The notes below the pieces were generated by a model. The model was not told the DNA's origin and ran no database searches. It was given only the letters and a program-made list of their open reading frames with translations. Positions 281 to 37,892 of a stretch of DNA of 44,971 nt are shown here, in pieces. The position numbers and the translations under genes are program-made. The DNA is taken from positions 1-44,971 of the forward strand of contig NIVC01004461.1 in assembly GCA_002269645.1 (NCBI GenBank). Reading direction: 5' to 3'. This DNA is from Macrostomum lignano. Its lineage: Eukaryota. Position 1 is the first letter of the stretch; every line of letters starts with the position of its first letter.

Positions 281-3200
281 CTGGTCTTAGTCTTAACAAG
301 AAAAGGCTACAACTCGCAAAAAAGCTGTAGTTCCAGAGCTGACTCACGTTCCCAAATTGACCGGCGAGAAGAAACAGGTCCATCTATCGGCCTCGTAGAC
401 GGATTCCGGCACGGAGCTGTCTTCTCCGCTAGTCCTAGCGCAGCCGGTGCTGTTGCAGACGCACTTGGTCAGGAGCCAGGCTCCGGTGACGTCAGTGCTT
501 GTGGCGCTGGCGCCAAGTTTTGAGCAGGGCCCGCTGCCGTCTGTGCCGCTGCAGTTGCACGACTCAACCTGATAGTCTGTCGCCACGGTGGTCGGCGCCG
601 CAGATTTGGCTGCTGTTGCCGCATCGGGGCCGGAGCCGTCCAGGCTGCCAACAGTGTACTCGGTGGCGGCCTGTCGGGCTGTCGACCTCGAGCAGGTGCG
701 CGTCTCCAGGAGCGGCAGCTGGCAGAAGTGATCGTAATTTTGCTCAGTAGGAGCTTTGCCAGCTGAGATGAACACCAAGTATTCGATCATCTCGTCGTTG
801 GCTGGGCCGTTGGTGGTGGTCGATTCAAGTGTCGTAGCGGCCTCAGTTGTCGTCTCGGTTCTGAACGTGGTGCTCTCGTTCATTGAGTTGTCGTTTTCCG
901 ACTGGATCGGTTCCGCTGTGTAATGCTTCACCTGAGCGAACAGACCGTCGAACTGTTTGACGCTCACCTTGGTGATGAGCATGCGCTCGGACTTTGGCCG
1001 CGTGGCGTTCACCTCCGGCTTAATGGCGGCCACGGCGTCCGGGTGGTTGCTGACCCAAACCTCCACTAGAGAGTCGTCGTTCAGATCTTTGACGGGGAAC
1101 TGGTACTGCCGGTCGTTGTAGATGCCGACGCTTAACACTGGCGAGCTCATCCGGCTGCCGTTGCCGGCCATCGTGAAGATGTTCGCCCCGTTCTCGATCA
1201 CCTGCGGCAGTTTGTGTGGGAAATGTATTAGAGAACGGTTGTTATCTTGTATGAAGACAATTTTAACCTCGTAATAATAATTTAATAACTGATTACACCT
1301 GCCCTAATGGCCAGATGTGCAACCGACAGCTCAGCCGCAGCTATTGCACGGCACATCTGAAGGCTGCGTACGGCTGTTCAGTCCAAGGACTGGGGGGGTC
1401 GCCACACACCCTCAATTACCCCAGCTGATGCTGGCACTTATTTTACAGCTGGGTGAACTGAGGCAATGCAGAGTTAAGTGTCTTGCTCAAGGACACAAAT
1501 TGTTCCGAGTGGGTCGAGAATCGAACTCCCGACCCTCAAGTCGTGAGTCCGATGCCTTTACCACTAGGCTACAACTCCTCGTGTGATGATGAGTTTAACC
1601 TTCACGATGAGTGCAGCTCTGTATAAAACTCTGTATAGGTAAACAATGTAAGTTCGTGAATAACAAAAATGTGAGTCTCTCAACACAGACAGACTCCATA
1701 CTCACCTGAGCAACAACTGCTTGCGACGGTTTTAACTCATTCGGATCGTATTGACTGGGCTCCACAAATATGCTGCCGTTGGCTGACTGACCGGTGCCGA
1801 TGGAGCAACCCGAATCCTTGCCAGAGCCCTTGCCGAACTTCTCTGCGGATTCGGATTGCTAGTGTTTAACTTTACTGTCATCACTAAGATAAGTAGAATT
1901 TTGGAGACAGGTACATGGAAAAATGTCTAGTTGCACTTACTGCCCTCAATGCTATTAGTAGACTGCTTCTCCACATTCATTTTGATATTCCCCAGATCAA
2001 TTGTAGTTGGCGTCTCGCCCGCCACCTGCTTGTTGCCCAGCGCCAGGCCAGTTGTGCGAAAGTTTTCTAACGCGCGCAGCGACACGTCCGACCGTCTAAG
2101 CCGCTCCTCGCTTGACAGCGTCGACGTGTCAACACCGCCGCCGCCGCCGCCGCTGTTGCTGTCGCTATTGTTTGACATCGTAGACTGCTGACTACGCACA
2201 ATTTCGTCGAGCATGTTCAACGATGACGCCAGGACCAGAGAGCTGGTTTCCTTGATCTGGTCGTAAGTGACGTCCTCCGAGCTTGACAGATCGACCAGCC
2301 GTTTGGAGATAAGATCGCCGGCCGCAACGGTGTTCTCCTTGCTGCTTTCGCTGATCTCGTTCGGCACGGAGTTGGCGCCCTTCAGCATTTCCCCGGACAG
2401 CTGCAGCGTCTGTAGCTGTTCAGTCTCCGAAGCGTTCGGATTAAAAGATTCGATGGCGTTTCTGGCGGCATCCACAACCAAGGCCTTGGCCTGGCAGGGC
2501 GTGCGATGACCGAAAGCTTGAGTTTTAGTATCGCTTTATTGCAGCTACCATGCCACTGCCTGCTCAGACATGCCGCTATAGTGCTAATTCACCTACTGTA
2601 CTCACCGCACTCCACTCCACTGCACCCACTGCACCATACTGACTTGGGCTGGACTCGACAACCAGCCGCGAAGTCCCAGCCCGCAGATCGTAATCGTCAT
2701 CCTTAAGTTGCTAATTTAATAAATTCACCCTTGAGTAAATACCTTTACATGTACGGTTATCAAAAACAGCTATTTCCCCAAACGACATCCGACTTCACCA
2801 ATTCCAAAATTTCATAACTACCAAACTTCAGAGAAGCTAGCAAACCCAACGGTACAGCTCTAAAGCCCATGCTCACCGCAGATCTCTCCTTCCTTCTCTT
2901 TTCCGCAGCCACTGGATCTGTGTCGTTGGCTGCACCGCTCGCATCCTTGGAGACCTGGTTGATGGCGGACAGGAGAGGCAGGGCTATCTGGGCCATGCTA
3001 ACAACGCTGCCACTCTTCCCGGCGCCAATAATGTCGGTGAAGAACGGACTATTGGACTGGAACTCCTCGGATTTCATAGCCCTGGGAGTCACCCGAACCC
3101 GGGTCTGCGCATGGAAGGCCTCGCTGTAGGCGCCGTCAAACACTGACACGCAGATGGTCAGAGTGTAGTTGTTGGCCTCCTGACCGGCCGGCAGCTTAGC

Positions 3201-6200
3201 TTCAACCTCGCATGTGGGAGAGTCTGCGGCGCAACATTCGGGCGGGGATTGCAGGGTTGTTTGTTTGAGAACGAAAAAGAGGGAACGAAAGACAGATTAA
3301 TACGAGCCTATTTAGGCGATGCAGTAGGGGCTTTTCCTGGCTAAATGAAATGAAATAAATGGACTTCCAGCAAGAGGAGAGCTGATTGTAGTATCCCTGC
3401 TGAGGTTGGCTCTGACCGGCTGAGGGAAATAGCGGACCAGGAAGGACTGTGGCTTCGGCAGGCACCACCAGGTCCCTGGAAATATTTTCGCTGCGATAAA
3501 ACAGAGCCTGCGCACACAAACTTCAAGAACATGGGCTATCTTTTTGCTGCGCACCTTCTCAAACAAGAATCAAGTCGCCAGCCCATCGAGACATTCGACG
3601 ATTCTGCCAGAAGGTCGGATTTTTCCTAAAAGCGCCAGTGTATTCAGTACACCCCCTGTGCTCCAATCAGCACTGCGCCTCAATGCAGCCTTGCAAGCCT
3701 CCGAATTTTACCAGCACGTCGATCACACGTGTCTGCATCAGCTCTGACTTCGTTGGTCTCTGGCATTCACCCAGACAGAGCTTCTGGACCTTCAGCAGGT
3801 GGCACCAGGTGACTATGGACACCCAGTTGCAAATTTCTCCACTTTCGCTGATCAAGCCCCGACAGTGGGCAAGCCTCAACTGCCGGAAGCCCTCAGCTGG
3901 TCTCTCAAACATTCCGGCATCACCCCGACGTCAACGGATGAACACCAGGCGACTACGAACTTCACCGATCAGCAACAAGGGCAACAAAAAGTTAGCCCGT
4001 GTTCTTGAATTTCGTGTGCGTGCGTTGCTCTGTTTTGGAACAGCAAAAAATCGTAAGATGGGTTCCCCCTGGTAGTTCGACGGGCGGAAAAAATGGCTTG
4101 GTAGACCCACTGTTAATCCTGCTTATTTAGGAGCCAGTGCGTATTATCTTATTAATGTGAAATGTGAACCAGCTTTGAACGAGTGATCCGATTATCATGT
4201 ACCATTCTAATCTCCAAGTGGAATGATAAATTAGTACAGGTATAGCGACGTGGTTAAGATATACATGTAGAGACACTAAATTGTTATTGTGGCTGGGGGT
4301 GCTTAATATTGTATTTGGGGGGTGCTTGCTTTTGAGGGGGAGGGGGTACTTGCTATTTGGGAGAGGGGGGTACTGGCTACATGTATCTACATGTATGGGA
4401 TTCTTTCTATCCAGGGATGCTTGCTATTTAGGGATGCTTGCTATCTGGATAGATGCTTGCTATCTGCAGGATGCTTGCTTTACTCGAATAAGGTGATTTA
4501 TAAAACTGAAGAAGGAACTGGTTCTTAAGAAAATGTGCTTCTTTAGTTGTTTTCCCTGAATAATTTTTGCTCCTTGCTTATTGCGCGCCCGAAAGGGGGC
4601 ACTAGATTGCTAGTAGAGACACTAAAAGAGGTCACTCACTGAGGATCAGCGGATAGCAGTCGGCACGCTTGGTTGGTGTCTGTTCGAAACTGTAGCCGAC
4701 AGTGTAGATCATGTGCTCACCCTCGGTCGTTGAGGGCGGATAGCTGCAGGTAAAGAAGAATTTCGTCTTCATCGACTCGCCATTAGCCGGGTAGATGCTT
4801 GTGGAAATTTTGCTGGCGTTGGGGCCCTGGTTGACAGAGATGTACAAGAATTTGAATCCGTAGTTAGTGGAGTCGGAGCCGCGCCAAGCGCGCAGGCGGA
4901 TGATGTAGTAGCCGTCACCCTCCGGGAAGAAGTTCGGCGGATCGATGGACAGGCCAGAGGAGGTTCGGCCTGGCGGAGTGGAAGACGGTTAGTGCTAAAA
5001 CTTCAGATTAGTTAGTTCTGCTTATGCTCATTTGTCGTTAGCAAAGACAGCGTACAAATAACCAGGACTGTTTTATTTTGAAACGACGCATTGCTCGTGA
5101 ATCACTCGAGACGATAGAGACTAACAAATCGTTCTTTTCCTTTACGATCGGCGACAAGCGGAGAACAGACGACTCCAGTTGGCAAGCCGCTTCATTAGGC
5201 GCCAAGTCGCACTACTATTACGCTACTCGCGCTGTGCCATGGGGCGCGGGGCGTCGTCGCGCTTTGATTTGCTCTCCTCGCTAACCAAAAAGACGGTCTC
5301 TTGATGCGGAGTCTCAATCTGTTGCCAATTACGCGAGTGCGCTGCTCTGTGTTCATTCTTTCGGTTGCCTAGGGGTTCGGAAAGTCCGCGTGTCCTGACG
5401 CCGACACAGCTAGACTAGAGGGATACACGCCAGCCTATGCATCTGTAGTGAGCCGCCAGTTTGGTGTTAGGCGTCGCACTATTGTCAGCAGTTTCCTTCG
5501 CCCTTGCCCTCGCCCTGGGTTGCTGTCTGCCGCTGGGCAGCCTCCCTCACCTTTTTCTGCCTGTTCTCTGTCGCCCCCCCCCTGTCACGCTGGTGTCCTG
5601 TTTCCCTTCTCGAAGTCCTAAAGTCACTTGCTGGTCCGTGTTTACTGAGGAATCACGTGCCCCAGGGCCCTTTCCCTAATCTATTCATTGTTTCTAAATA
5701 CTAAAAATTGTTTCTAAAAATCAATCTTCTAATCAATCTGTCTTTGTTTCTAAAAATAGACACTGATTCACACGGCCCTGTGCACTTTGCCCGGGGACCC
5801 CTGCCTTCTCTCTGGCGGGAAGTGACGTCAGTTCTAAAAATAGAAAAAGTCACTATAGTAGGCTTTTCAGATTACCGATTCCAGAACCAGAATCGGTTCG
5901 AAGCTTTTCATATTGTCTGTTCCGTTTTCAGAATCGGTTCCAGAACTGTGATCCGATTCTGGAATTCGTTTCGAGAAATTTTCTCGATCCGTAGTCATGT
6001 TTGCACTTTAACAGTAAAATATAGGCCGGCCAAATTTAAATCGTCATTTTTTATAATTGATATATTAGTACTCTGTTTTTTGTCATATCCAAGACGAAGC
6101 AAAGTCAAGGAAAGACAATTAAATTATAAAGACTGACAAAGATAAAATGGGTTCGAAGCTTTTCATTTTCCTGCCGATTCTGGTTCTGGAACCAATCTTC

Positions 6201-9200
6201 GTGAAAAGCCTATAGGTCTCGCGCACAAAGGTGCACTGGGGATTCAAAGGCTATAAATACGGACCCTCTTAACCCTTGGTTCAGTCAAGGAGTGTTTCCC
6301 AAGTTTAGTTCTTAGGTTCTTAGTTTCTCAGTTCTTAGGTTCTTAGTTTCCGAAGTTTTCTGACAGTTCTATTGTCCAATCAACTCTCCCTTTATTGGCC
6401 TGACTAAACTTAGACGCCCAAGCCCAAAGGAGGCTAACACGGCCTTCCCAACCACCCACTGAGCGCGGCGGGATCTGCTGACCAGACGCCTTGTTCGTTA
6501 ATCTTCAAATCTGCACGCTGTGCTGAGTTCGTTGACTTGTTTATTTCGTTCCGACGGGAAGCTCACCTCACCGAAGGCCGAGACCTGAAGGAACTGGAGG
6601 CAGCACTACCTACGCTACTTAGAGCTACAAGAAGACTTCCAAGAAGAGACTCGAGACTTCAGGCAGAACTTAAGTGCCTGCTAATCGGGAAGTAAAGCTC
6701 TGTACTTCACTGGTAGAGCAGTGGGATTTCAAGACCTTACCAGGCCACCTCGAGACAACCATCTGTACTTCACTGGTGGCAGCGGTGGGATTTCAAAGAC
6801 CTACCAGGCCACCCCAAGCGAGAACCCTCAGTACAGCACATCCTGACGTCTCGCCTCGCTGAAGGAAGACAGGTGCTGAAAGACTGTGTGGGTGCGTCCT
6901 GATGCCCCAGACTTCGGGAAGTGTCAGCACAGCAAATTTATAATTCATTCAAAAAAAAACAAAAATAATGAAGATAGAACAGTAAGAAACACAACAGAGA
7001 AACAGTTTTTAGTTGACGAAGATTTTTACGAAACCGTCAGATAGAAGATTCAAGGATTAGCTTACCTCGTACTAATCTTTGAGGATAGTAACTCTAGGTG
7101 CGTAAAAGTACTTAAAGTACATCTAAGATATAAGTTCTTGCAACAAAGGTATACAGTAAGTTACCTGTGCTGGCATACTCCACTCCATCTGCAAAAAATC
7201 AAGTAGAGTAGAGTATTTTGTCATTTCAATAGCAGCTCATCATATAGAGAATAAATATGACAAAATTCCTTCCGACCTTTCTGGGTCCAATATTTGTTAT
7301 CAAGTTCCATCTGGTTGAAGCCGTCGTCTAGCGCTGTGGAGCTCAAATCGCTCGGGCAGACCTTCAGCGAGCTGTTAAGCGGAGTGCACTGCCAGAAGAA
7401 TCCGTAATCGATGCCGGCCACGTAGTTCTCAATACGCATTTGAAACTTGGTGACCACCTTCGGGTTCACGCTGATCGACTTGTAGCCGCAGGCGTTGCCG
7501 TTCAACTTTTTATGAGGTATCTTCCGCCTGAAGCAGTTGCTTACGCACCTGCGGGACAGAGGGTGGTGGTCATAGCTAAGGAGCTGTCACAACCCAGTAG
7601 CTATTATTAAACATAAATCCATGATTGTTAGCTCACACTCCGCTGACAATGGGTGGCTCGCCTCTGGTGATTTTCAGCGTAGCCGAGACCGGCTCCGGGA
7701 GCAGGTCATCGCACGTATCCTTGATCACCAACGTGAAGTGAATCGCGTCACCCTCGAAGCTGAACTTGGTGTCCACATACACAATGCCGTTGTGCATGTA
7801 GTATAGAAAATTGTACTTTCCAATCGCTGCCTGATCCTTCCAGCCTGGGATCCTGTCGTACACGCCTTTCACTACTTCGTTTGGATAGCTGGAGGTGGTG
7901 ACGTTCACTTTCATCCAGTCCTCCAAGCCCATAGGCTTCAGGTAATGCCAGGTGACCAGCGCCTGCGAAATGAAGCAAGTGCTCTCGTGAACGTACCCGC
8001 CATCGATTTTGAGCTTCTTGCAGGCAAGTGTCTGCTCGCTGGCATTGTAGGCGTAATTAGGGCCGAACTTCATCGGCTCGCAGTCGTGCCGGCAGTACGT
8101 AGCCACAGACCAGCAGGGCAACTCGCCGTCCGCGTCGAACTTGTTCGGATTAACGCTGCACGAAGCGTCGAAGCTCAGCAGGGAGCCGTAGGGAGCCTGC
8201 GCAGGGTCCTCTAAGTCATTCCAGGTGATGTTATCCTTGCTGTACTTGAACTGGAGGCAGGGCTCCACAGGGGCTTTGTACACATAGAAAGTGACGCACT
8301 CGGTCGCATTGATAGTTGGCTCGTCGTTCATTGTGAGCTGCGCGCAGACCCGGTAGGCTTTGGAAAAGCGCAGAGAGAAGGCCGGCAAGGTGAGCAGGCG
8401 GAGGTGAATGTTCGTTGGCCCGAACCAGTCACCTTCCAGCAGGTTTTGCAGGTTCTCGCTTGACCGGTGCTTTGTGTAGAACGCCTGAAGCTGAGCTGTA
8501 AGCGCGAGTGCAGGGAAGCGGTTGCATTGAAATATGCATGAACATCTACTGTAACCCTAGAGTTCCGCTGTAACCAAAATTACCTACGGTAATATTGTGA
8601 GAAAGTAAAGAATGATAGAAGCAGTTTAGCCTATCACACAGTAACAATATATCATTTATTTATTGCACAAGAAGAATGGTTGGGATTGCAATCATCTTAA
8701 CTTCAGCCCCCGACCCTCCAACCACTATGTGCATGTGGCACCAAAAATCTCTATTGCTTGAGTCGCCAACCTCAAGGACTTAATAGGTTCCATCACAAAA
8801 GCTTTGAAACTGGCAACATTCATTCATTTCTACTGCTATGCCCTCCAACCATAAAATCAAGGGCTCCAATGGTCTCTTAAGCCTTTTAAGTCTCAGCTAT
8901 GGAGTGGCCAATATTACTAAATATGGAAACTACGAGTAGATATGGGAAATATGTGTTCCCACAGCGGTAGCATAAAAACCTCTGTGAAATTTCCCGTAGC
9001 CGTCAAAGATGCTTGAAAAGGAAGAAAGAAAGCATGCCAGACAAGAAAAGCGCTGGCTATAAAGACAACCTTGTGTGCTTCTTAGTGAAGCGATACTTCG
9101 AGACTCACTCATTTTGGATACTTTAAAATCAATATCAATGTTCGAGATCAAGCTTTTACTGACCGCCATAGTCCGTCCAGAGTCCAGAGCCATTGTTAAA

Positions 9201-12200
9201 CTCCTCGACTGTCCACTTAACGTGCGTACTGATATTATAGCAAGATATTTTCATGTCGCCACCGATTTCAACCACCTGGTTGCGTTTATAACGCGTTTTG
9301 GTAAACCTCGCAGCCAAGTTGGGCACCGGGATTGAGCAGAAGCCCTTGGAAACGGTCATAGTCCAGGAGTAGTCGAGGCTGGAAAAACTGTTGGCTGCGT
9401 GCAGAGTCACAGTTTCGGCACCGTAGTTTTCAAAGTTTTTGAAGAAGGTGGTCCTGCTAAAGGCTGAACCCGTCAGGGACTCCTGGTAGCCATTGAGGTA
9501 GTAGTCAGTGAGCTCGGTGTCCCAATAGCACTGCGACTTCCTCGACGAGAAGTAGGGATCGGAGTTGCAGAAGGCCTCGAAACCGAACATATGCTTGCTG
9601 CCGTTGTTGACTACGCGGGTGCCGAAGTTGCTAAAGTCGATGATGAAGCAGGTGTTAGTTGGGAACGCAGCGAAGTCCATGGTGACCTCGTAGGGATAGT
9701 CCATCGGCATGGCCACTTTGGCGCCAATAGTAACATCGATGACGCTTCGTTTTAGCTCAATGTTGTACGAGTCTGCCTGCCAAACAAGCGGGTTGGTCAC
9801 GTTCACCCGAACGGTGAAGAGCAGAGGCTTGTCGAACTTGTGCTCGATCCAGTTCACCGTAGTTACAGCCGTATGACCGTCACCGAAGTCCCAGTTATAA
9901 TACAGCGGAGACAGATGACCGAATTGCGTTATAGCAAAAAACTTGAGCGGGTGCTCAATCGGATAAGCGTACGTGCGACTCATATCATGCACCGGAGTGT
10001 TGCCAGTGTACATCCCCGGGTACAGAGTGATATTGCGATTCAGGTTGACGATCTGCGAGTAGATCCGTTGCGACCAGGTGAGAGTCTGCGAGCCGGCTTT
10101 GTTGTACAGGCGCACGGTGGCCGTGAAGTTGCCCGGGTGTCGGTACTGCTGTGTTGGCGCGAACTGGCAGTGTACAAAGCCAGGCCCGAACTGCCCGGTG
10201 CAAGCGTCGTTGTTGGCGGTGTTGGAGGTGTCGCAGCTGACTAGGGCAATGCCGGTCGCTGCGCTGCTGCCGTCGCCGAGGTCGATGTCATAGAAGACCG
10301 AATAGAGTGGCTCCAAGGCGTTGATGGTGGAGTTGCGGCACAGCTGAAGCCGGGTGTCTGTCATGTTCTCCGGTCGACGAAGCAGCTTGATGAAGGAGGC
10401 GAGCAGCTCGAAACCAGCTGGCACGAACATGACTTCAACTACGGTGCGGTCGAGCTGCGCCGTTACGCTAGTGGTGACGCGGTTGACGATGGTGCAGGAG
10501 GCGGAGTAGTTGCCGATACCGGCGAAGGTGTGCGTGAACGTGGTGGTGTGGTTGTTGTCGTTGACTGTCACCGTCTGGCTGTTGCCGTCGCCGAAATTGA
10601 TGGTGACAGTGTAGTCGGAGCCCCAGACGAGGTTCAAAGTGTAGGTCACAACCTGGCCAGGCCGCACTACATAGGCTGAAGCTGTCAGCACGGGGCCCAT
10701 GATGGCCTCCTGGACCACCAGGCTGGTGTTGCTCACCTGTCGGCTGACCTGGTTGAACATTTCAATTTTTCTAATGTAGACACCTCGTGAGTAGTTGCGC
10801 TTGTACTCAACGACGCGACGCGAAGCGCTCCAATCGACTAGGACAAAGACTGGGTCGCCGCCGTCGGCCGGGTCAATGATGGCGCTCACATTGGTTGGCA
10901 CGTCTGAGTTGCTGGCGTTCCACGTGAAGTAGATCGTGGACAGAGCGGGGCTGGTCGGCGTGGTCGCCAATAGCAAGTCAGGAACAATGAATGTCGTATC
11001 GTTCAACAACGGGTGCTGAATGATCACCGTGTGCTGCAGGTGGATTTTGAAAGCAAAACTAAAAGATTACTTTCAATATAAGCTGCTAAAGACTGAGAAA
11101 GTGCAATTACAATGTTGGTTATTGGCATATGAAACTTACGCAGACAAAGAAGCTAGACACGTGGTTGACGGTGGTCAGACAGACGTTGTAAAATCCGTCG
11201 CTGGCAAAGCTGTAGCCGCTATTAGCCAGCATGGAGGAGTTGAAATCCGCCAGTGAAGCATTCACTGACCAGCTGTACACGGGCTTGCTGCCGCTGTGGC
11301 TGCCAATCTGGTATGGGACCTTCGTGTGGCTCGTATCTGGAAATTGTGAATGAATTTTGTTTAGATGCAGTTAATTAAGATCTGCTCCCACAATTGTATG
11401 TTTCACAAGCTGATCGCATGTTTCAGACACTAGTAACTTGTTGACCTTTAAAACTCAGCTTAAACTCACAGTAAAGCGGAGCCGCAAAGGTGACATTAAT
11501 CAGCGGGATTTGCACGATCAATGGCAGCTTAGACACTGCGGTTTGACCGTCAACCCCGGACACAATTGAAGCGGTGATATTGAACGGATATTCGTCGTTG
11601 CAGTAGTTGGTTGTCCAGTTGCAGCCCACGTTGGCGAAGCGATGGTTGCCCAGCACCGACAGTTGCCGATTGCCGAAGAACTGCACCGCCTTCACGCTGC
11701 GTCGGGCACCGGAGTTGAGAGTCGCCAGAGTGACTCTGCGAACAGTCGCGCCATCCAGGGTGAAGTCGGCGAAGCTGGTATTCCAGGACAGCAGGTGCTC
11801 CGTTTCGTTTAAGTTCACCTCGGTTAGAGTGCTATTTTCACATGCCACAGCACCGTTGGGGTCATAAAGTGCAAGAAGATCGCCCGGAATCAGGCTAAGT
11901 CCGCCGCCCGGCAGGTAAACAGTCTGGAAGTAATGAGAAGCAGACGGGCTAGTCAGGTTGGCAGCGACGCTCTGGTGGACGTAGTAGCCATCGGCGAATA
12001 GAGACGAATCCTGGGCACTCCCGGATCGGCAGATTCGACGGTTGGTCGACCAGGCGGAGCCGGAGCCGCAGGCAACGGACCGAGCGCCTGGCAGGGCCGA
12101 GCAGTTGTTGGTGCAGGCGTTGGCGCGGTTGCAATAAACGGAGCCACTGCTGCAGACTGGGCGCAGAGCCTGCATTAACAGATAAGGATGGGTTAGGATT

Positions 12201-15200
12201 GGTGAAAGCTGCATAACAGTAATCGCGGAACACGAAGCTTCGGTTAGTGGGAGGAGCAAGTGTGCTTGTGTGAGTGATGGGTGTGCTTGTGTGAGTGATG
12301 GGTGTGCTTGTGTGAGTGATGGGTGTGCTTGTGTGAGTTATGGGTGTTTTGTGTGAGAGATGGGTGTGTTTGTGTGAGTTATGGGTGTTTTGTGAATGAT
12401 TGATGTGCTTGTGTGAATGGATAGTGTGCTTGTGTGAGTGATGGGTGTGCTTGTGTGAGAGATGGGTGTGCTTGTGTGAGAGATGGGTGTGCTTGTGTGA
12501 GTGATGGGTGTGCTTGTGTGAGAGATGGGTGTGCTTGTGTGAGTGATGGGTGTGCTTGTGTGAGAGATGGGTGTGCTTGTGTCTTGTGTCTGTGTCCGTT
12601 CCATGTGCCATGGTTTTCGGTGTCCGTTCTTTATACCGTGGGATTAAAATTATTTGCGCTCAGTTTTGACGTTATATCCCCTACTCCGTGCACTTTTTTG
12701 ACCGGAAAACATCTCTTGAATAAGGAATTGAAAAGACGCACCAGAACGGCGATAGTGGCCGGTTGGGCGACAGGCCTGACCAGCGGTACGACGGTCGTGA
12801 TGGTTATGTTGGAGTCAATCCGGAAGCTGGAAAAGACGGTCACTGAGTGCTCCGGGTCCGTCCATATAGCGTCATTCGATTCGTTAAAGGCCACGCTCCG
12901 GCGATATGTCACCGGGAATGTGTCTGCGACAGGGAAGGCGGGTTATCGCCTATTATATGCAAACCCTAACCTATACATGCGCTCACCACCGTCTACCCTA
13001 CTCACCACCGTCTACCCTACTCGCCACCATCTACCCTACTCACCATCATCTACCCTACTCACCATCATCTATCCTACTCACCATCATCTACCCTACTCAC
13101 CTTTATCTACCCTACTCACCACCATCTACCCTACTCACCATCATCTACCCTACTCACCATCATCTCCCCTACTCACCATCATCTACCCTACTCGCCACCA
13201 TCAACCTTACTCGCCATCATCAACCCTACTCACCATCATCTACCCTACTCACCATCATCTCCCCTACTCACCATCATCTACCCTACTCGCCACCATCAAC
13301 CTTACTTGCCATCATCTACCCTACTCACCATCATCTACCCTACGCACTATCATCTACCCTACTCACTATCATCTACCCTACTCACCATCATCTACCCTAC
13401 TCACCATCATCTACCCTACTCACCATCATCTACCCTACTCACTATCATCTACCCTACTCACCATCATCTACCCTACTCACCATCATCTACCCTACTCACC
13501 ATCATCTACCCTACTCACCATCATCTACCCTACTCACCATCATCTACCCTACTCACCATCATCTACCCTACTCACCATCATCTACCCTACTCACCATCAT
13601 CTACCCTACTCACTATCATCTACCCTACTCACCATCATCTACCCTACTCACCATCATCTACCCTACTCACCATCATCTACCCTACTCACTATCATCTACC
13701 CTACTCACCATCATCTACCCTACTCACCATCATCTACCCTACTCACCATCATCTACCCTACTCACTATCATCTACCCTACTCACCATCATCTACCCTACT
13801 CACCATCATCTACCCTACTCACTATCATCTACCCTACTCACCATCATCTACCCTACTCACCATCATCTACCCTACTCACCATCATCTACCCTACTCACCA
13901 TCATCTACCCTACTCAGCATCATCTACCCTACTCACCATTATCTCCCTACTCACCATCATCTACCCTACTCACTATCATCTACCCTACTCACCATCATCT
14001 ACCCTACTCACCATCATCTACCCTACTCACCATCATCTACCCTACTCACTATCATCTACCCTACTCACCATCATCTACCCTACTCACCATCATCTACCCT
14101 ACTCACCATCATCTACCCTACTCACCATCATCTACCCTACTCACCATCATCTACCCTACTCACCATCATCTACCCTACTCACCATCATCTACCCTACTCA
14201 CCATCATCTACCCTACTCACCATCATCTACCCTACTCACCATCATCTACCCTACTCACCATCATCTACCCTACTCACCATCATCTACCCTACTCACCATC
14301 ATCTACCCTACTCACCATCATCTACCCTACTCACTATCATCTACCCTACTCACCATCATCTACCCTACTCACCATCATCTACCCTACTCACCATCATCTA
14401 CCCTACTCACTATCATCTACCCTACTCACCATCATCTACCCTACTCACCATCATCTACCCTACTCACCATCATCTACCCTACTCACTATCATCTACCCTA
14501 CTCACCATCATCTACCCTACTCACCATCATCTACCCTACTCACTATCATCTACCCTACTCACCATCATCTACCCTACTCACCATCATCTACCCTACTCAC
14601 CATCATCTACCCTACTCACTATCATCTACCCTACTCACCATCATCTACCCTACTCACCATTATCTCCCCTACTCACCATCATCTACCCTACTCGCCATCA
14701 TCTACCCTACTCACCATCATCTACCCTACTCACATTCTCGGCCCCTCCCCACCTCTGCAGTGTACCCTCGGCAGTCAATCCTACCTGGCAGATTAGAAAA
14801 CTGCTTAGCCGTGCCGTCACCGAAGTTAAAAATGGTGGACAAGTTGGAGCCGAGGCTGATCCTGACGGTAGCTCGGAACTCCTCCATCACAGGATAATAT
14901 CCTGGCGTATTGTTGGCAAAGTCCAGCTCCAGTGACAGCTGGGCGCTGATGGGATAGTACACCTTGTAGGATTTGGTCTTGTGCTCCTCGGCCTCCGGCG
15001 TGGTAAACTTAACGTAAACTAGGCCGCGTCGGTCTGCAATACGAGCCACGATTTTCTAATGCTGAACCCGCACTTTTTACTATGAGTAGACTGTTGTGCG
15101 AATAAATTCTAAAGTTTTTTCAGTCTACGAGCTACGGCCTTAAAACTCGTATTTTATTTGCTCTATTCGGAAAAAAATCTATTCCAAGCGGACTCACTGG

Positions 15201-19530: not shown

Positions 19531-19759
19531 TCTCTTAACAGTGTCAGAGAAAGTTCTAATTACAATATTTTGTGCCTCACATGCTGCTCTCACGACGCAT
19601 TAGTCGATTTTTCATGTTAAATTGGTCTGTCACTTGAAAAAACGTTTAAAATAATAACAAGAGCAATTTAAAATGAAAAATCGACTAATGCGTCGTAAGA
19701 GCAGCATGTGAGGCACAAAATATTGTAATTAGAACTTTCTCCGACACTGTTAGAAGAGA
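19531..19759. repeat. Long inverted repeat (~85-bp arms, ~57-bp spacer)
   Basis: Arms 19531-19615 and 19673-19759 are reverse complements with few mismatches. Confidence 0.9.
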
Positions 19760-22146
19760 ATATCAGATAATTAAGAATGTCAAAGAATTGAGAATGTCAG
19801 AGAATTGAGAATGTTAGAGAATTGAGAATGTCAGAGAATTGAGAATGTCAGAGAATCAAGAATGTCAGAGAATTGAGAACGTCAGAGAATTGAGAACGTC
19901 AGAGAATTGAGAATATCAGATAATTGAGAATATCAGATAATTGAGAATATCAGATAATTGAGAATGTCAGAGAATTGAGAATGTCAGAGAATTGAGAACG
20001 TCAGAGAATTGAGAATATCAGATAATTGAGAATATCAGATAATTGAGAATGTCAGAGAATTGAGAATGTCAGAGAATTGAGAATGTCAGAGAATTGAGAA
20101 CGTCAGAGAATTGAGAATATCAGATAATTGAGAATGTCAGAGAATTGAGAATGTCAGAGAATTGAGAACGTCAGAGAATTGAGAATGTCAGAGAATTGAG
20201 AACGTCAGAGAATTGAGAACGTCAGAGAATTGAGAATATCAGAGAATTGAGAATGTCAGAGAATTGAGAACGTCAGAGAATTGAGAATATCAGATAATTG
20301 AGAATGTCAGAGAATTGAGAATATCAGATAATCGAGAATGTCAGAGAATTGAGAACGTCAGAGAATTGAGAACGTCAGAGAATTGAGAATATCAGATAAT
20401 TGAGAATGTCAGAGAATTGAGAATATCAGATAATCGAGAATGTCAGAGAATTGAGACTGTCAAAGAATTGAGAATGTCAGAGAATTGAGAACGTCAGAGA
20501 ATTGAGAATGTCAGAGAATTGAGACTGTCAGAGAATTGAGAACTTCAGAGAATTGAGACTGTCAGAGAATTGAGAATATCAGATAATCGAGAATGTCAGA
20601 GAATTGAGACTGTCAAAGAATTGAGAATGTCAGAGAATTGAGAATGTCAGAGAATTGAGAACGTCAGAGAATTGAGAATGTCAGAGAATTGAGACTGTCA
20701 GAGAATTGAGAACTTCAGAGAATTGAGACTGTCAGAGAATTGAGAATATCAGATAATCGAGAATGTCAGAGAATTGAGACTGTCAAAGAATTGAGAATGT
20801 CAGAGAATTGAGAATGTCGGAGAATTGAGAATGTCAGAGAATTGAGAATGTCAGAGAATTGAGAATGTCGGAGAATTGAGAATGTCAGAGAATTGAGAAT
20901 GTCAGAGAATTGAGAACTTCAGAGAATTGAGACTGTCAGAGAATTGAGAATATCAGATAATCGAGAATGTCAGAGAATTGAGAATGTCGGAGAATTGAGA
21001 ATGTCAAAGAACTGAGAATGTCAGAGAATTGAGAACGTCAGAGAATTGAGAATGTCAGAGAATTGAGCATGTCGGAGAATTGAGAATGTCAAAGAACTGA
21101 GACTGTCAAAGAATTGAGAATGTCAAAGAACTGAGAATGTCAGAGAATTGAGAACGTCAGAGAATTGAGAATGTCAGAGAATTGAGCATGTCGGAGAATT
21201 GAGAATGTCAGAGAATTGAGCATGTCGGAGAATTGAGAACGTCAGAGAATTGAGAATATCAGATAATTGAGAATGTCAGAGAATTGAGAATATCAGATAA
21301 TCGAGAATGTCAGAGAATTGAGAACGTCAGAGAATTGAGAACGTCAGAGAATTGAGAACGTCAGAGAGTTGAGAATGTCGGAGAATTGAGAACGTCAGAG
21401 AATTGAGAATGTCAGAGAATTGAGACTGTCAAATAATTGAGAATGTCAAAGAACTGAGAATGTCAGAGAATTGAGAACGTCAGAGAATTGAGAACGTTTT
21501 GAGAATTGAGAATGTCAGAGAATTGAGAACGTCAGAGAATTGAGAACGTTTTGAGAATTGAGAATGTCAGAGAATTGAGCATGTCGGAGAATTGAGAATG
21601 TCAGAGAATTGAGCATGTCGGAGAATTGAGAATGTCAAAGAACTGAGACTGTCAGAGAATTGAGAATGTCAAAGAACTGAGAATGTCAGAGAATTGAGAA
21701 CGTCAGAGAATTGAGAATGTCAGAGAATTGAGCATGTCGGAGAATTGAGAACGTCAGAGAATTGAGAATGTCGGAGAATTGAGACTGTCAGAGAATTGAG
21801 AATGTCAGAGAATTGAGAACGTCAGAGAATTGAGAATGTCAGAGAATTGAGCATGTCGGAGAATTGAGAATGTCAGAGAATTGAGAATGTCGGAGAATTG
21901 AGAATGTCGGAGAATTGAGAACGTCAGAGAGTTGAGAATGTCGGAGAATTGAGAACGTCAGAGAATTGAGAATGTCAGAGAATTGAGACTGTCAAATAAT
22001 TGAGAATGTCAAAGAACTGAGAATGTCAGAGAATTGAGAACGTCAGAGAATTGAGAACGTTTTGAGAATTGAGAATGTCAGAGAATTGAGAACGTCAGAG
22101 AATTGAGAACGTTTTGAGAATTGAGAATGTCAGAGAATTTAGAATC
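19757..22146. repeat. 17-bp satellite (GAGAATTGAGAATGTCA), large array S1
   Basis: About 140 monomers with recurring variant blocks. Confidence 0.97.
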
Positions 22147-22850
22147 TCCGTAAAATTCAAGGCTTCTGGAAGAATTAAAAGCATTGAGCCGTCAGATACA
22201 AAACTGACTTCACAGACTACCTGTTTAGCTTAACGCATAAGCGCTGAATGCATCTATGAAAATTCTAATGTATTTTCTATTTGTTTACTAGTAGTAGCAG
22301 TGGGTATAGTCAAACCAATTTTCATATAGGGCTAAACAGGAAATCCGATGAACAGACAGATATTACGGTGTCGCTAAAACTAGAAGCACAAAATAAGCCT
22401 AAAGTTTCTTTAACGCCTACTAAAAGTAGTAGTAGGCTAGCATAAAGAAGTGTCATCATAATACATTAGATTAATTTTTCTAGCAATAACGCACAAAACA
22501 GAACACACAAAGCTGGGTGAAAATCAATTATTGATAAAATCCAAACTACTCGTACATACAGGCATGTCTTGCATAGGCAATATGGGTGCTTAGTTAGCAT
22601 ACAGTTTCATCAATCAACATTATACTAAACACAATAGGATAGCGGGAAATGATCCACCCGCATAGCAACCGGGTGCTGACTATGGATACAGCAATGTCGA
22701 AACAGATTTTGTCTTTACCGAGACCGAGACAAAGGAACACAGGTCCCAAGAATAACTAAAATCCAAGGTGAACTGCCGCAATTTATAGGCTTTAAGATGA
22801 ATTCTCATGAAAATATATAGGAAGTCTAAATATATAGGAAGTCTATAAAC

Positions 22851-23320
22851 ACTGGTTTCTAAGCCGTATCCAAGGTAAAACTACCGGTTGTTAAGCCGTA
22901 TCCAAAGTAAACTACCGGTTTCTAAGCCGTATCCAAAGTAAACTACCGGTTTCTAAGCCGTATCCAAGGTAAACTACCGGTTGCTAAGCCGTATCTAAGG
23001 TAAATAATCAGTTGCTATGATGGATCCAAGGTGAACTACCGGTTGCTAAGCCGTATCCAAGGTGAACTACCAGTTGCTAAGCCGTATCCAAGGTAAACAA
23101 CCGGTTGCTAAGCCGTATCCAAGGTAAACTACCGGTTGCTAAGCCGTATCCAAGGTAAACTACCGGTGGCTAAGCCGTATTTAAGGCAAAAAATTGGTTG
23201 CTATGATGGATCTGAACTACCGGTTGCTAAGCCGTATCCAAGGTAAACAACCGGTTGTTAAGCCGTATCAAAGGTAAACTACCGGTTGCCAAGCCGTATC
23301 CAAGGTAAACAACCGGTTGT
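22851..23320. repeat. 31-bp minisatellite (AAGCCGTATCCAAGGTAAACTACCGGTTGCT), copy A
   Basis: Also at 25758-26227, 28369-28838 and 31363-31770 (the last is two monomers shorter). Confidence 0.93.
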
Positions 23321-23410
23321 TATGCTATCAAAATAAGTATTAGTTTTGAATAACCGGTATTCAATGTAAACAAGGGTTGCTATGATTGGTGCATACAGTT
23401 AGACTTGCGG

Positions 23411-23695
23411 TTAAAATGGCGAATCGACGTGAATGCCCAAACCAACGCCCGGAGCGAGTTTGTCACCAGCGCAGGCGGCCTGCGGCACTGTGTAATTCAG
23501 CTCGAATCGGGCCAGGCCGCCAACAGCCAAGAGGATGCCGATGCCGTACGATAGACGAACTTCGTCGCGCGGGAACCGCGGCAATCGCCAGTCGCCAACG
23601 GGGGCGCCGCCAGCGTTGGACACGAGGCAGCCGGCGTTAGCGAAAGCGTGCAGACGGAATAAGTCGAAAAAATTGCCACGCCTAGTGACCAGCGG
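23411..23695 (-). pseudogene. SAMM50: Duplicated 3' fragment of SAMM50 exon 4, copy A
   Basis: Identical to 31861-32145 except one synonymous change; homology breaks at CCAGCGG. Confidence 0.9.
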
Positions 23696-24094
23696 TGACA
23701 AGCAGTGACAAATGATTAATCGCTCGATTCGCTGTCGAGGCCCAAATTTCGCAAGGCTGCTTGTCGTCGCTGTCTGACCGCTTGCATTGTAAGATTTGGT
23801 AAGCCGGGATAGTGAGCTAAGGAGGCACGAGTAAAAATTCTTTCAGTTAACTCTTCATGCCTGAATTTTCTCTCTTGCCTTTTTCTAGCTTGGCCATAGA
23901 CTATTCTCCAGTCAAAGATGTCACTTCTCCTGTTGAGGAAGTGTTTTCTTGCCTGTGCATAATAAAGAAACTGTTTTGGAATTCAAAGTGTACAGCGCAG
24001 TCTATAACATGCATTACTTGCCATCTGGTAAGACAGAGAAGTGGGGAAGAAATTCTGTCGTAGACAAGTGGTTAATAGCGTATTGGTGAAATTA

Positions 24095-25053
24095 AAATGT
24101 CAGAGAATTGAATGTCAGTGAATTTAGAATGTCAGGGAATTGAGAATGTCGGAGAATCAAAAATGTCAGAGACTTGAATGTCAGAGAATCTAAAATGTCA
24201 TAAAATTGAATGTCAGAGAATTGAGAATGTCATAGAATTGAATGTCAGAGACTTGAGAATGTCAGAGAATTGAGAATGACAGAGAATTAATGTTAGAGAA
24301 TTGGGTGTCAGAGAATTGATGTCAGAGACTTGAGTTGAGAATGTCAGAGAATTGAGAATGTCAGAGAATTGAGAATGTCAGAGAATTGATGTCAGAGACT
24401 TGAGTTGAGAATGTCAGTGAATTTAGAATGTCAGGGAATTGAGAATGTCGGAGAATCAAAAATGTCAGAGACTTGAATGTCAGAGAATCTAAAATGTCAT
24501 AAAATTGAATGTCAGAGAATTGAGAATGTCATAGAATTGAATGTCAGAGAATTAATGTCAGAGAATTGAGAATGTCAGAGAATTGATGTCAGAGACTTGA
24601 GTTGAGAATGTCAGAGAATTGAGAATGTCAGAGAATTGAGAATGTCAGAGAATTGATGTCAGAGACTTGAGAATGTCAGAGAATTGAGAATGTCAGAGAA
24701 TTGATGTCAGAGAATTGGGTGTCAGAGAATTTATGTCAGAGACTTAAGTTGAGAATGTCAGAGAATTGAGAATGTCAGAGAATTGAGAATGTCAGAGAAT
24801 TGAGAATGTCAGAGAATTGATGTCAGAGACTTGAGAATGTCAGAGAATTGATGTCAGAGACTTGAGAATGTCAGAGAATTGAGAATGTCAGAGAATTGAT
24901 GTCAGAGAATTGGGTGTCAGAGAATTTATGTCAGAGACTTAAGTTGAGAATGTCAGAGAATTGAGAATGTCAGAGAATTGAGAATGTCAGAGAATTGAGA
25001 ATGTCAGAGAATTGATGTCAGAGACTTGAGAATGTCAGAGAATTGAGAATGTC
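24095..25053. repeat. 17-bp satellite variant array S2
   Basis: Mixed 14-17-bp monomers; sister arrays at 27002-27664 and 29613-30658. Confidence 0.93.
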
Positions 25054-26317
25054 TCCGTAAAATTTAAGGTTTCTAGAAGAATTAAAAGCATTGAGACGTC
25101 TGATACAAAACTGACTTCACAGACTACCTGTTTAGCTTAACGCATAAGCGCTGAATGCATCTATGAAAATTCTAATGTATTTTCTATTTGTTTACTAGTA
25201 GTAGCAGTGGGTATAGTCAAACCAATTTTCATATAGGGCTAAACAGGAAATCCGATGAACAGACAGATATTACGGTGTCGCTAAAACTAGAAGCACAAAA
25301 TAAGCCTAAAATTTCTTTAACGCCTACTAAAAGTAGTAGTAGGCTAGCACAAAGAAGTGTCATCATAATACATTAGATTAATTTTTCTAGCAATAACGCA
25401 CAAAACAGAACACACAAAGCTGGGTGAAAATCAATTATTGATAAAATCCAAACTACTCGTACATACAGGCATGTCTTGCATAGGCAATATGGGTGCTTAG
25501 TTAGCATACAGTTTCATCAATCAACATTATACTAAACACAATAGGATAGCGGGAAATGATCCACCCGCATAGCAACCGGGTGCTGACTATGGATACAGCA
25601 ATGTCGAAACAGATTTTGTCTTTACCGAGACCGAGACAAAGGAACACAGGTCCCTAGAATAACTAAAATCCAAGGTGAACTGCCGCAATTTATAGGCTTT
25701 AAGATGAATTCTCATGAAAATATATAGGAAGTCTAAATATATAGGAAGTCTATAAACACTGGTTTCTAAGCCGTATCCAAGGTAAAACTACCGGTTGTTA
25801 AGCCGTATCCAAAGTAAACTACCGGTTTCTAAGCCGTATCCAAAGTAAACTACCGGTTTCTAAGCCGTATCCAAGGTAAACTACCGGTTGCTAAGCCGTA
25901 TCTAAGGTAAATAATCAGTTGCTATGATGGATCCAAGGTGAACTACCGGTTGCTAAGCCGTATCCAAGGTGAACTACCAGTTGCTAAGCCGTATCCAAGG
26001 TAAACAACCGGTTGCTAAGCCGTATCCAAGGTAAACTACCGGTTGCTAAGCCGTATCCAAGGTAAACTACCGGTGGCTAAGCCGTATTTAAGGCAAAAAA
26101 TTGGTTGCTATGATGGATCTGAACTACCGGTTGCTAAGCCGTATCCAAGGTAAACAACCGGTTGTTAAGCCGTATCAAAGGTAAACTACCGGTTGCCAAG
26201 CCGTATCCAAGGTAAACAACCGGTTGTTATGCTATCAAAATAAGTATTAGTTTTGAATAACCGGTATTCAATGTAAACAAGGGTTGCTATGATTGGTGCA
26301 TACAGTTAGACTTGCGG

Positions 26318-26602
26318 TTAAAATGGCGAATCGACGTGAATGCCCAAACCAACGCCCGGAGCGAGTTTGTCACCAGCGCAGGCGGCCTGCGGCACTGTGT
26401 AATTCAGCTCGAATCGGGCCAGGCCGCCAACAGCCAAGAGGATGCCGATGCCGTACGATAGACGAACTTCGTCGCGCGGGAACCGCGGCAATCGCCAGTC
26501 GCCAACGGGGGCGCCGCCAGCGTTGGACACGAGGCAGCCGGCGTTAGCGAAAGCGTGCAGACGGAATAAGTCGAAAAAATTGCCACGCCTAGTGACCAGC
26601 GG
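26318..26602 (-). pseudogene. SAMM50: Duplicated 3' fragment of SAMM50 exon 4, copy B
   Basis: Same sequence and breakpoint as copy A. Confidence 0.9.
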
Positions 26603-28928: not shown

Positions 28929-29213
28929 TTAAAATGGCGAATCGACGTGAATGCCCAAACCAACGCCCGGAGCGAGTTTGTCACCAGCGCAGGCGGCCTG
29001 CGGCACTGTGTAATTCAGCTCGAATCGGGCCAGGCCGCCAACAGCCAAGAGGATGCCGATGCCGTACGATAGACGAACTTCGTCGCGCGGGAACCGCGGC
29101 AATCGCCAGTCGCCAACGGGGGCGCCGCCAGCGTTGGACACGAGGCAGCCGGCGTTAGCGAAAGCGTGCAGACGGAATAAGTCGAAAAAATTGCCACGCC
29201 TAGTGACCAGCGG
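28929..29213 (-). pseudogene. SAMM50: Duplicated 3' fragment of SAMM50 exon 4, copy C
   Basis: Same sequence and breakpoint as copy A. Confidence 0.9.
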
Positions 29214-37408: not shown

Positions 37409-37892
37409 TATACCCTATAGTCAGGAAAGTGGCCTTTGCCATGGAAAATTCTGGCGCATACAAGAGGTCCTTGGCGCACTTGGCGCACAATCATGGTGCA
37501 CACTGAGGTCCCTGGTGCATGCGGCACACAATCATGGCGCACACTGAGGTCCCTAGCGCATGCGGCGCATAATTGCAGTGCATAAAGTCTCTGACATATG
37601 CAATGCTAGGCCTATGCACAACTTTGGTGCATAAGGAATCAGAATAGAATCTTTATTAGCATAAAACTGGTATGAATGAATTCTAAGAATTTTGTAAATT
37701 TGTCATAAAATACATAATCTATATAAAATACATAAATTATGTTAATTTATATAAATTACATAAAATAAGGGCACAGACATGGCACATAGACGGCGCACAA
37801 ATGGCGCATAGATGGTGCATAGACAGCACATAGATGGTCCCAAAAAATTTATTCTGGCGCACACTGTGCCACCTTCCTAACTATGGGATATA
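37409..37892. mobile_element. MITE-like element, 25-bp TIRs, probable TA target
   Basis: tataccctatagtcaggaaagtggc / gccaccttcctaactatgggatata (21/25); internal GGCGCA motifs. Confidence 0.7.

What the first reader, a model, noticed from the sequence alone, without database searches (positions are those of the whole stretch)
5283..5392. Spliced-leader-RNA-like ~110-nt sequence lacking the AUG|GU donor, antisense in a PKD1-like intron
5285-5328 (CCAAAAAGACGGTCTCTTGATGCGGAGTCTCAATCTGTTGCCAA) matches the Macrostomum SL exon, as I recall it, at 33/44 without gaps, including a 14-nt exact run. It starts AACC like flatworm SL RNAs. An Sm-site-like ATTCTTTCGG and a small 3' hairpin follow, giving about the length of a flatworm SL RNA, and a CpG-rich ~200-bp promoter-like stretch precedes it. 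However, the flatworm-typical terminal AUG and the GU donor are replaced and the first stem (ACCGT/ACGGT) is broken. It could be an SL-derived, donor-less Sm RNA analogous in concept to nematode SmY RNAs, a second SL class, an SL-headed mobile element or a decayed SL gene. The first three would be notable.
Basis: partly seen in the sequence, partly recalled or inferred. Interest (0 to 1): 0.75.

Follow-up and report, generated by a model that had tools for sequence, protein, structure and literature searches.

The report
Decayed spliced-leader relic in an intron
A 45-base stretch in a Macrostomum lignano intron is a real but decayed copy of only the spliced-leader mini-exon, most likely the head of an old reverse-transcribed copy of a trans-spliced RNA, so it is an ordinary genomic fossil and not a new small RNA gene.

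Summary
Window 5284-5328 (+) matches the published Macrostomum spliced leader (SL) at 33/45 ungapped (33/44 against the M. lignano 44-mer), including the 14-nt exact run. The next best site in the window scores 25 and shuffles reach at most 27. The window is M. lignano.

The reading as a ~110-nt SL-RNA-like gene does not hold. I recovered two genuine Macrostomum SL RNA genes from public contigs. Their leaders are identical, their 3' halves are 83% identical, and they fold into three stem-loops (z = -3.0). The window element resembles them only in the leader. Its supposed 3' half aligns at shuffle level (48%). It lacks the GU donor, the AUG, a published Sm motif and a stable fold (z = +0.77). 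A covariance model built from the genuine genes gives 14.8 bits, deletes stem-loop II, the Sm site and stem-loop III, and breaks 8 pairs of stem I.

Similarity starts at the SL cap site and ends at the splice donor. The A-richest tract of the whole window lies 1.67 kb downstream on the same strand. The best reading is a decayed retrocopy of a trans-spliced RNA, inserted antisense in an intron of a PKD-domain gene. Such leader-only loci are already reported in parasitic flatworms. Genome-wide copy number and expression could not be tested.

The parts
5284..5328 (+). Relic of the spliced-leader mini-exon. It matches 33/45 and carries 12 substitutions (7 transitions, 5 transversions). The terminal ATG is now CAA and no GT donor follows.
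   Evidence: published SL; genuine genes
5329..5392 (+). It is unrelated to genuine SL RNA 3' halves, and I read it as the start of the retrocopy body.
   Evidence: Local alignment scores 10 against a shuffle mean of 12.6. Global identity is 48% and 46%, equal to shuffles. The covariance model deletes 46 positions here. No Sm motif is present.
5393..6950 (+). Inferred body of the retrocopy. It is non-coding or fully decayed and CT-rich in 5450-5680. An internal direct repeat lies at 6699-6768 / 6762-6834.
   Evidence: No Pfam hit in three frames. No frame is depleted of stop codons. No copy elsewhere in the window or in L004. The extent is an inference from the A-rich tract.
5859..6212 (.). 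MITE-like element bounded by 38-nt inverted repeats (85% identity), probably a later insertion into the body.
   Evidence: sequence
6951..7005 (+). A-rich tract (37/55 A) that contains the only A-run of 9 or more in the window. Read as a decayed poly(A) tail.
   Evidence: It is the A-richest 55-nt stretch of the 45 kb, and no stretch is as T-rich.
5100..5283 (.). Upstream flank, mildly CpG-rich. It has no similarity to the upstream regions of genuine SL RNA genes and is not shown to belong to the element.
4632..4975 (-). Downstream exon of the host gene (PKD-domain protein). The intron that holds the relic begins just to its right.
   Evidence: PKD domains

Best explanation
The element is a leader-only fossil. 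An RNA that had received the 45-nt spliced leader by trans-splicing was reverse-transcribed and inserted, antisense, into an intron of a PKD-domain gene of Macrostomum lignano. The RNA may have been an mRNA, a non-coding transcript or a retroelement transcript. The copy runs from the leader's first bases (5284) to an A-rich tail (6951-7005). It later took up a MITE-like insertion and has since decayed by about 27% in the leader. It has no splice donor, no Sm site and no SL RNA fold, so it cannot act as an SL RNA and is most likely inert.

Shown: real homology to the leader; homology confined to the leader; absence of every other SL RNA feature; the A-rich tract downstream.

Inferred: the RNA-mediated origin, the extent of the copy, and its lack of function.
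For: The leader matches 33/45, well above chance.

Two genuine Macrostomum SL RNA genes were recovered, L002:615-722 and L003:1589-1694. Their leaders are 100% identical and their 3' halves 83% identical, while their flanks are unrelated (48-56%). A DNA-level copy or pseudogene of the gene should therefore still show the 3' half at roughly the leader's 73% identity. The window instead shows 48% and 46%, the same as shuffles.

Similarity begins within one base of the SL RNA 5' end and ends within three bases of the donor. That is exactly the part carried by trans-spliced RNAs.

The covariance model from the genuine genes aligns only the leader half: 14.8 bits, rough E of 0.05, 46 positions deleted, and 8 non-canonical pairs in stem I.

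The fold z-score is +0.77, against -3.03 for a genuine gene.

The only A-run of 9 or more, and the A-richest 55-nt tract (67% A) of the 45 kb on either strand, lies 1.67 kb downstream on the same strand. Its roughly 33% non-A content is in line with the 27% decay of the leader.

The mismatches are scattered as random decay predicts (probability of a run of 14 or more = 0.064).

Antisense orientation in an intron is the usual bias for retro-insertions (established knowledge).

Leader-only loci attributed to trans-spliced retroelement transcripts have been reported in parasitic flatworms, at 597 loci (PMC12582326). SL relics mark retrogenes in dinoflagellates (PMC6050394).
Against: No target-site duplication was found. 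No parent gene, reading frame, reverse transcriptase or other Pfam domain was found in the body.

The last three leader bases (ATG) are all changed, which is somewhat unlikely under uniform 27% decay (about 2%). That may mean the homology ends 3 nt before the donor.

The poly(A) argument is post hoc.

The genuine genes used for comparison come from other Macrostomum species, not M. lignano itself.

Copy number and expression could not be examined.
Confidence: 0.6

Rival explanations
1. It is a decayed SL RNA gene copy (a DNA-level duplicate or pseudogene) whose intron-like half was lost by deletion or rearrangement at or near the donor.
For: SL RNA pseudogenes with a lost AUG or donor are reported in flatworms (PMC12582326). 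The leader is complete from its first bases. The upstream 200 nt are mildly CpG-rich.
Against: Under neutral decay the 3' half should be about as similar as the leader (73%). It is at shuffle level. No copy of the genuine 3' half occurs anywhere in the window (best 29/57 ungapped; covariance-model scan). A deletion would have to start exactly at the donor. The downstream A-rich tract would be coincidence.
Confidence: 0.17
2. It is a functional SL-derived small RNA: a donor-less Sm-class RNA (SmY-like in concept) or a second SL class with a non-canonical donor such as GA|GTGCGC at 5338.
For: The leader is retained at 73% with a 14-nt perfect run. A U-rich ATTCTTTCGG and a 4-bp hairpin follow. 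The upstream region is CpG-rich.
Against: No Sm motif by the published definitions. The fold is no better than shuffles (z = +0.77). Stem I is broken. There is no similarity to genuine 3' halves or promoters. It is a single copy in 45 kb plus 10 kb of extra M. lignano DNA. The leader is 100% conserved across M. lignano, M. cliftonense, M. hystrix and three environmental contigs, so 27% divergence looks unconstrained. M. lignano transcriptomes show a single SL (PMC8629364). The variant leader is absent from the metagenome, GTDB and IMG/VR scans, although those have low power.
Confidence: 0.05
3. The functional strand is the minus strand. The intron of the PKD-domain pre-mRNA carries an anti-SL sequence about 300 nt upstream of its 3' splice site. 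It pairs with SL RNA and could attract or block trans-splicing at the next exon.
For: The predicted duplex between the genuine leader and the intronic antisense is -49.1 kcal/mol, against -15.8 ± 3.2 for shuffles. It lies close to the acceptor.
Against: The duplex follows automatically from the sequence similarity. In SL RNA those bases are already paired in stem I. There is no precedent that I know of, and no conservation or expression data.
Confidence: 0.03
4. It is a chance resemblance.
For: None beyond the short length.
Against: It matches 33/45, against a maximum of 27 in 50 shuffles and 25 elsewhere in the window. The local alignment scores 44, against a shuffle mean of 11 and a maximum of 25.
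Confidence: 0.01

Closest known systems
Leader-only SL loci linked to retroelements in parasitic flatworms (Mol Biol Evol 2025, PMC12582326)
   Same: The only SL RNA feature present is the leader sequence. There is no donor, no Sm motif and no SL RNA fold. The authors read these loci as integrated copies of transcripts that had been trans-spliced.
   Different: Those 597 loci lay in recognisable LTR or LINE repeats and often held partial leaders. Here the leader is full-length, the cargo shows no reverse transcriptase or other domain, and the host is a free-living macrostomid.
SL-relic-tagged retrogenes of dinoflagellates (PMC6050394, PMC5585692, PMC12014239)
   Same: A DNA-encoded remnant of the spliced leader sits at the 5' end of a retroposed copy and marks its RNA-mediated origin.
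   Different: Dinoflagellate retrogenes are usually coding, are often re-expressed and carry stacked relics. Here a single relic heads a non-coding, decayed body inside an intron.
Genuine Macrostomum SL RNA gene (109 bp, PMC8629364; L002:615-722 and L003:1589-1694 recovered here)
   Same: The 45-nt leader is homologous (73%).
   Different: The window element has none of the features of the genuine gene: AUG, a GUAAG donor paired into stem I, stem-loop II, AUUUUUAG, stem-loop III, or a fold at z = -3.
Flatworm SL RNA pseudogenes with a lost AUG or donor (PMC12582326)
   Same: An SL-related locus lacking the AUG and the donor.
   Different: Those loci keep the rest of the SL RNA (the intron-like half). 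This one does not.
Nematode SmY RNAs
   Different: SmY RNAs have an Sm site between two conserved stem-loops and occur as multi-copy conserved genes. Neither an Sm site nor such a structure is found here.

Membership tests
Flatworm (Macrostomum) SL RNA gene | Leader exon homologous to the species' spliced leader | tested here: met
   33/45 ungapped, far above shuffles. But it is 27% diverged, whereas the leader is identical in all Macrostomum sources seen.
Flatworm (Macrostomum) SL RNA gene | Terminal AUG and canonical GU(AAG) donor directly after the leader | tested here: not met
   The window reads TTGC-CAA-TTACG where genuine genes read TTGC-ATG-GTAAG.
Flatworm (Macrostomum) SL RNA gene | Stem-loop I pairing the leader with the donor region | tested here: not met
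   8 non-canonical pairs in the covariance-model alignment.
Flatworm (Macrostomum) SL RNA gene | Intron-like half with an Sm-type motif flanked by two hairpins | tested here: not met
   46 model positions deleted. Identity to genuine 3' halves equals shuffles. No UVUUUGG or RAU(3-6)GR.
Flatworm (Macrostomum) SL RNA gene | Fold more stable than composition predicts | tested here: not met
   z = +0.77, with 151 of 200 shuffles folding as well. The genuine gene gives z = -3.03, 0 of 200.
Flatworm (Macrostomum) SL RNA gene | Expressed TMG-capped small RNA that donates its leader to mRNAs | not testable with these tools
   No read data are available. The literature reports a single SL in M. lignano.
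SL-tagged retrocopy (leader-only relic) | SL similarity confined to the mini-exon, bounded by the cap site and the splice junction | tested here: met
   Similarity starts at base 2 of the 45-mer and ends at base 42. Both flanks are at chance level.
SL-tagged retrocopy (leader-only relic) | Poly(A) tract at the 3' end, on the same strand | tested here: met
   6951-7005 is 37/55 A, the A-richest tract and the only A-run of 9 or more in 45 kb. The link to the leader is an inference.
SL-tagged retrocopy (leader-only relic) | Target-site duplication flanking the insert | tested here: inconclusive
   None of 9 nt or more. Flank alignment is at shuffle level. At about 27% decay a short duplication may be unrecognisable.
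SL-tagged retrocopy (leader-only relic) | Identifiable intron-less parent transcript or retroelement body | tested here: inconclusive
   No Pfam domain and no stop-codon depletion. The M. lignano transcriptome and repeat libraries are not searchable here.
SmY-like Sm-class small RNA | Sm site between two conserved stem-loops, in multi-copy conserved genes | tested here: not met
   No Sm motif, no stable fold, and one copy in the DNA available. Genome-wide copy number was not testable.

The most novel reading that the evidence does not exclude
The locus is not inert. One possibility is that a promoter in the CpG-rich stretch 5100-5283 drives a donor-less, SL-headed RNA that competes for SL-binding factors. 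The other is that the antisense copy in the PKD-domain pre-mRNA intron pairs with SL RNA (predicted -49 kcal/mol) and modulates trans-splicing at the acceptor 300 nt downstream. Neither is excluded, because expression, copy number and cross-species conservation could not be examined.
Probability: 0.06. Interest if true: 0.6.

Novelty: new member of a known kind. Interest (0 to 1): 0.15.

Why it matters
It matters little in itself. It is one more fossil showing that trans-spliced RNAs are occasionally reverse-transcribed into flatworm genomes. Such relics can serve as date-stamped markers of retroposition in Macrostomum, as they already do in dinoflagellates.

It also has a practical use. SL-seeded searches for SL RNA genes should require the donor, the Sm region and the fold. 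The first published M. lignano 'SL RNA' was itself a mis-assigned SL-carrying locus (PMC8629364).

A by-product is two genuine Macrostomum-type SL RNA genes recovered from environmental contigs, one of them next to a U1 snRNA gene in a contig binned as a bacterial MAG.

Tried and rejected
- **Rfam.** Gathering and permissive thresholds gave no hit in the window. This is uninformative, because genuine Macrostomum SL RNA genes also hit nothing in Rfam.
- **Orthologous or homeologous introns through proteins.** The 251-aa and 623-aa PKD-gene exons have no Macrostomum relatives in the protein collection.
- **Reaching the site through the CPEB gene.** The CPEB gene identified the species and gave a 99.4% identical scaffold copy (L004). 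That locus lies 26 kb from the site and near the scaffold end.
- **Collection scans with a degenerate leader pattern.** Only canonical leaders were found (L001 a trans-spliced CNBP-like mRNA; L002 and L003 genuine genes). The variant was never found.
- **Second copies.** No second copy of the leader or of 5000-5800 in the window or in L004.
- **Target-site duplications.** None found.
- **Coding remnants in the body.** None found.
- **Selection on the leader.** The mismatch pattern is compatible with random scatter (P = 0.064).
- **Promoter comparison.** Upstream regions of the two genuine genes are themselves unrelated (48%). The lack of upstream similarity in the window therefore carries no weight.
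- **Not used.** The single representative-library protein search, because no frame of the body shows any coding signal.

Full report
**1. What is in the sequence**

Window 5284-5328 (+) reads ACCAAAAAGACGGTCTCTTGATGCGGAGTCTCAATCTGTTGCCAA.

The published leaders are these:
- M. lignano, 35 nt: CGGTCTCTTACTGCGAAGACTCAATTTATTGCATG (PMC8629364).
- M. lignano, 44 nt: CCGTAAAGACGGTCTCTTACTGCGAAGACTCAATTTATTGCATG (PMC5173321).
- M. cliftonense, 45 nt, and M. hystrix, 43 nt, with the same sequence (PMC10468722, supplementary Table S3).

The ungapped match is 33/45 (33/44 against the 44-mer), with the exact run AAAGACGGTCTCTT. The next best site on either strand of the window scores 25/45, and 50 shuffles of the window reach at most 27. 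A local alignment scores 44, against a shuffle mean of 11 and a maximum of 25. The homology is therefore real.

The 12 differences are 7 transitions and 5 transversions. They are scattered roughly as random decay predicts: the probability of a run of 14 or more, given 33/45 matches, is 0.064.

**2. Organism and setting**

The CPEB-like reading frame at 41371-42822 is 100% identical to BOX15_Mlig007523g6 of Macrostomum lignano. Scaffold NIVC01000087.1 of assembly GCA_002269645.1 is 99.4% identical to window 32288-43287. The window is therefore M. lignano, probably a duplicated or homeologous copy, or another assembly.

The element lies between minus-strand coding exons at about 4632-4975 and at 7166 or higher. 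Those exons belong to a gene whose 623-aa exon carries PKD domains (E = 3.5e-16). So the element sits antisense in an apparent intron, about 300 nt from the acceptor. 'PKD1-like' itself was not verified beyond the PKD domains.

**3. Genuine SL RNA genes for comparison**

I scanned the collections with a leader pattern that left the window's variant positions free. It returned three contigs:
- L001, a trans-spliced mRNA: the leader followed by a CNBP-like zinc-knuckle coding sequence.
- L002, holding a genuine SL RNA gene at 615-722.
- L003, holding a genuine SL RNA gene at 1589-1694.

The L003 gene lies 300 nt downstream of a U1 snRNA gene that scores 151.7 bits.

The two genuine genes have identical leaders followed by ATG|GTAAGACACCG. 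They then have a 6-7 bp hairpin (GATCCA....TGGATC), the motif AUUUUUAG, and a 5-bp hairpin (AGCCC......GGGCU). This matches the published description of the 109-bp M. lignano gene: a GTAAG donor, three hairpins and an Sm-like motif.

Between the two genes, the leader is 100% identical and the 3' half 83% identical. The 100 nt upstream (48%) and downstream (56%) are unrelated. The L002 gene folds with z = -3.03, and none of 200 shuffles folds as well. In that fold the donor GUAAGA pairs with the leader's CUCUUAC.

**4. The window element is not an SL RNA gene**

- Beyond the leader there is no similarity. The 82 nt after it score 10 in local alignment against a shuffle mean of 12.6. The 300 nt upstream and 440 nt downstream also score at shuffle level.
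- Global identity of 5329-5391 to the genuine 3' halves is 48% and 46%, the same as shuffled sequence.
- The genuine 3' half occurs nowhere else in the window. The best ungapped match is 29/57.
- A covariance model built from the two genuine genes, run without filters over the whole window, gives the element 14.8 bits (rough E of 0.05). It aligns only the leader half, deletes 46 model positions (stem-loop II, Sm motif, stem-loop III) and marks 8 non-canonical pairs in stem I.
- The stretch 5283-5400 folds no better than shuffles: z = +0.77, with 151 of 200 shuffles at least as stable.
- ATTCTTTCGG fits neither the flatworm UVUUUGG motif (PMC12582326) nor RAU(3-6)GR. No instance of either lies in 5284-5450.
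- Rfam gives nothing. It also fails to detect the genuine genes, so that result carries no weight.

**5. What it most likely is**

The similarity begins within one base of the SL RNA 5' end and stops within three bases of the donor. The only abundant RNAs that carry exactly this piece without the intron-like half are trans-spliced transcripts such as L001.

A neutral DNA copy of the gene that kept 73% identity in the leader should keep a comparable level in the 3' half, because that half is conserved between species. It does not.

On the same strand, 1.67 kb downstream, lies the only A-run of 9 or more in the whole 45 kb (there are no T-runs of 9 or more). It sits inside the A-richest 55-nt tract of the window (37/55 A, 6951-7005). 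Only one other region reaches 35 A's, and none reaches 35 T's. The chance that this tract falls within 2 kb downstream on the correct strand is roughly 2-4%. That figure is a post hoc estimate. Its roughly 33% non-A content matches the 27% decay of the leader.

I therefore read 5284-7005 as an old retrocopy of a trans-spliced RNA. A MITE-like element with 38-nt inverted repeats (5859-5896 / 6174-6212) inserted into it later.

The body shows no Pfam domain, no frame depleted of stop codons and no second copy in the window or in L004. No target-site duplication was found. These absences are the weak points. They are expected for an insert this decayed, but they leave the cargo unidentified.

**6. 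Comparison with what is known**

Calvelo and colleagues discarded 597 candidate SL RNA loci in parasitic flatworms because their only SL RNA feature was a partial leader sequence. Those loci were mostly in LTR and LINE elements. The authors proposed that they arose by integration of retrotransposon transcripts that had received the SL by trans-splicing (PMC12582326).

In dinoflagellates, DNA-encoded SL relics are the standard marker of retrogenes (PMC6050394, PMC5585692, PMC12014239).

The present locus is a further member of this kind, in a free-living macrostomid and with unidentified, non-coding cargo. It fails every defining test of an SL RNA gene except leader homology, and every testable feature of an SmY-like Sm RNA.

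**7. Rivals**

| Reading | Confidence | Main point |
|---|---|---|
| Retrocopy of a trans-spliced RNA | 0.60 | Best fit to the boundaries of the homology and to the downstream A-rich tract |
| SL gene pseudogene with its 3' half deleted exactly at the donor | about 0.17 | Possible, but needs that coincidence and leaves the A-tract unexplained |
| Functional SL-derived small RNA or second SL | about 0.05 | Has nothing in its favour beyond the leader match |
| Anti-SL role for the minus-strand intron (duplex -49.1 kcal/mol) | about 0.03 | Pure inference from the sequence similarity |
| Chance | about 0.01 | Excluded |

**8. Limits**

- The genuine genes used as yardsticks are from unidentified Macrostomum-type species, not M. 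lignano.
- No genome-wide copy count, no orthologous intron and no expression data could be obtained. The protein collection has no relatives of the flanking exons, and the available DNA collections do not hold flatworm genomes.

**9. Verdict**

The interpretation as a ~110-nt SL-RNA-like gene is not supported. The locus is most likely an ordinary, decayed, SL-tagged retrocopy and is of low interest.

Noticed in passing
L003:1121-1694 (JAGQZA010000190.1): A contig binned as a Flavobacteriaceae MAG carries a eukaryotic U1 snRNA gene (151.7 bits) and, 300 nt downstream, a genuine Macrostomum-type SL RNA gene. This shows flatworm contamination of a bacterial MAG, and it shows U1 and SL RNA genes linked.
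   Followed up: partly
L002:601-614: A partial copy of the SL 5' end (GCCGTAAA) lies directly upstream of the genuine SL RNA gene (ttcGCCGTAAActctttGCCGTAAAGACGG). Its meaning is unknown.
   Followed up: no
window 5859-6212: A MITE-like element with 38-nt terminal inverted repeats (85% identity) lies in the same intron.
   Followed up: partly
window 12260-14733: Two satellite arrays: a 21-nt unit x16 and a 19-nt unit x92 (95% matches). GC skew is extreme (-0.97), and the arrays give long spurious reading frames.
   Followed up: no
window 19756-31800: A 17-nt satellite (x140) is followed by a higher-order tandem repeat of about 2.9 kb built from 17-nt and 31-nt arrays, with about four units.
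   Followed up: no
window 32298-35646: 45-nt (x20) and 34-nt (x16, x18) minisatellites lie within the range of the SAM50/Omp85-like gene on the minus strand. Their copy numbers differ between the window and scaffold NIVC01000087.1.
   Followed up: no
window 32288-43287 vs L004: The window is 99.4% identical, not 100%, to NIVC01000087.1 over 11 kb. It is probably a duplicated or homeologous copy, or a different assembly of M. lignano.
   Followed up: partly
window 344-12259 (minus strand): The large PKD-domain gene has no counterpart in the protein collection for its 251-aa and 623-aa exons. It therefore appears not to be annotated in the deposited M. lignano proteome.
   Followed up: partly
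window 6699-6834: A tandem direct repeat of about 70 nt (84% identity) lies inside the putative retrocopy body.
   Followed up: no
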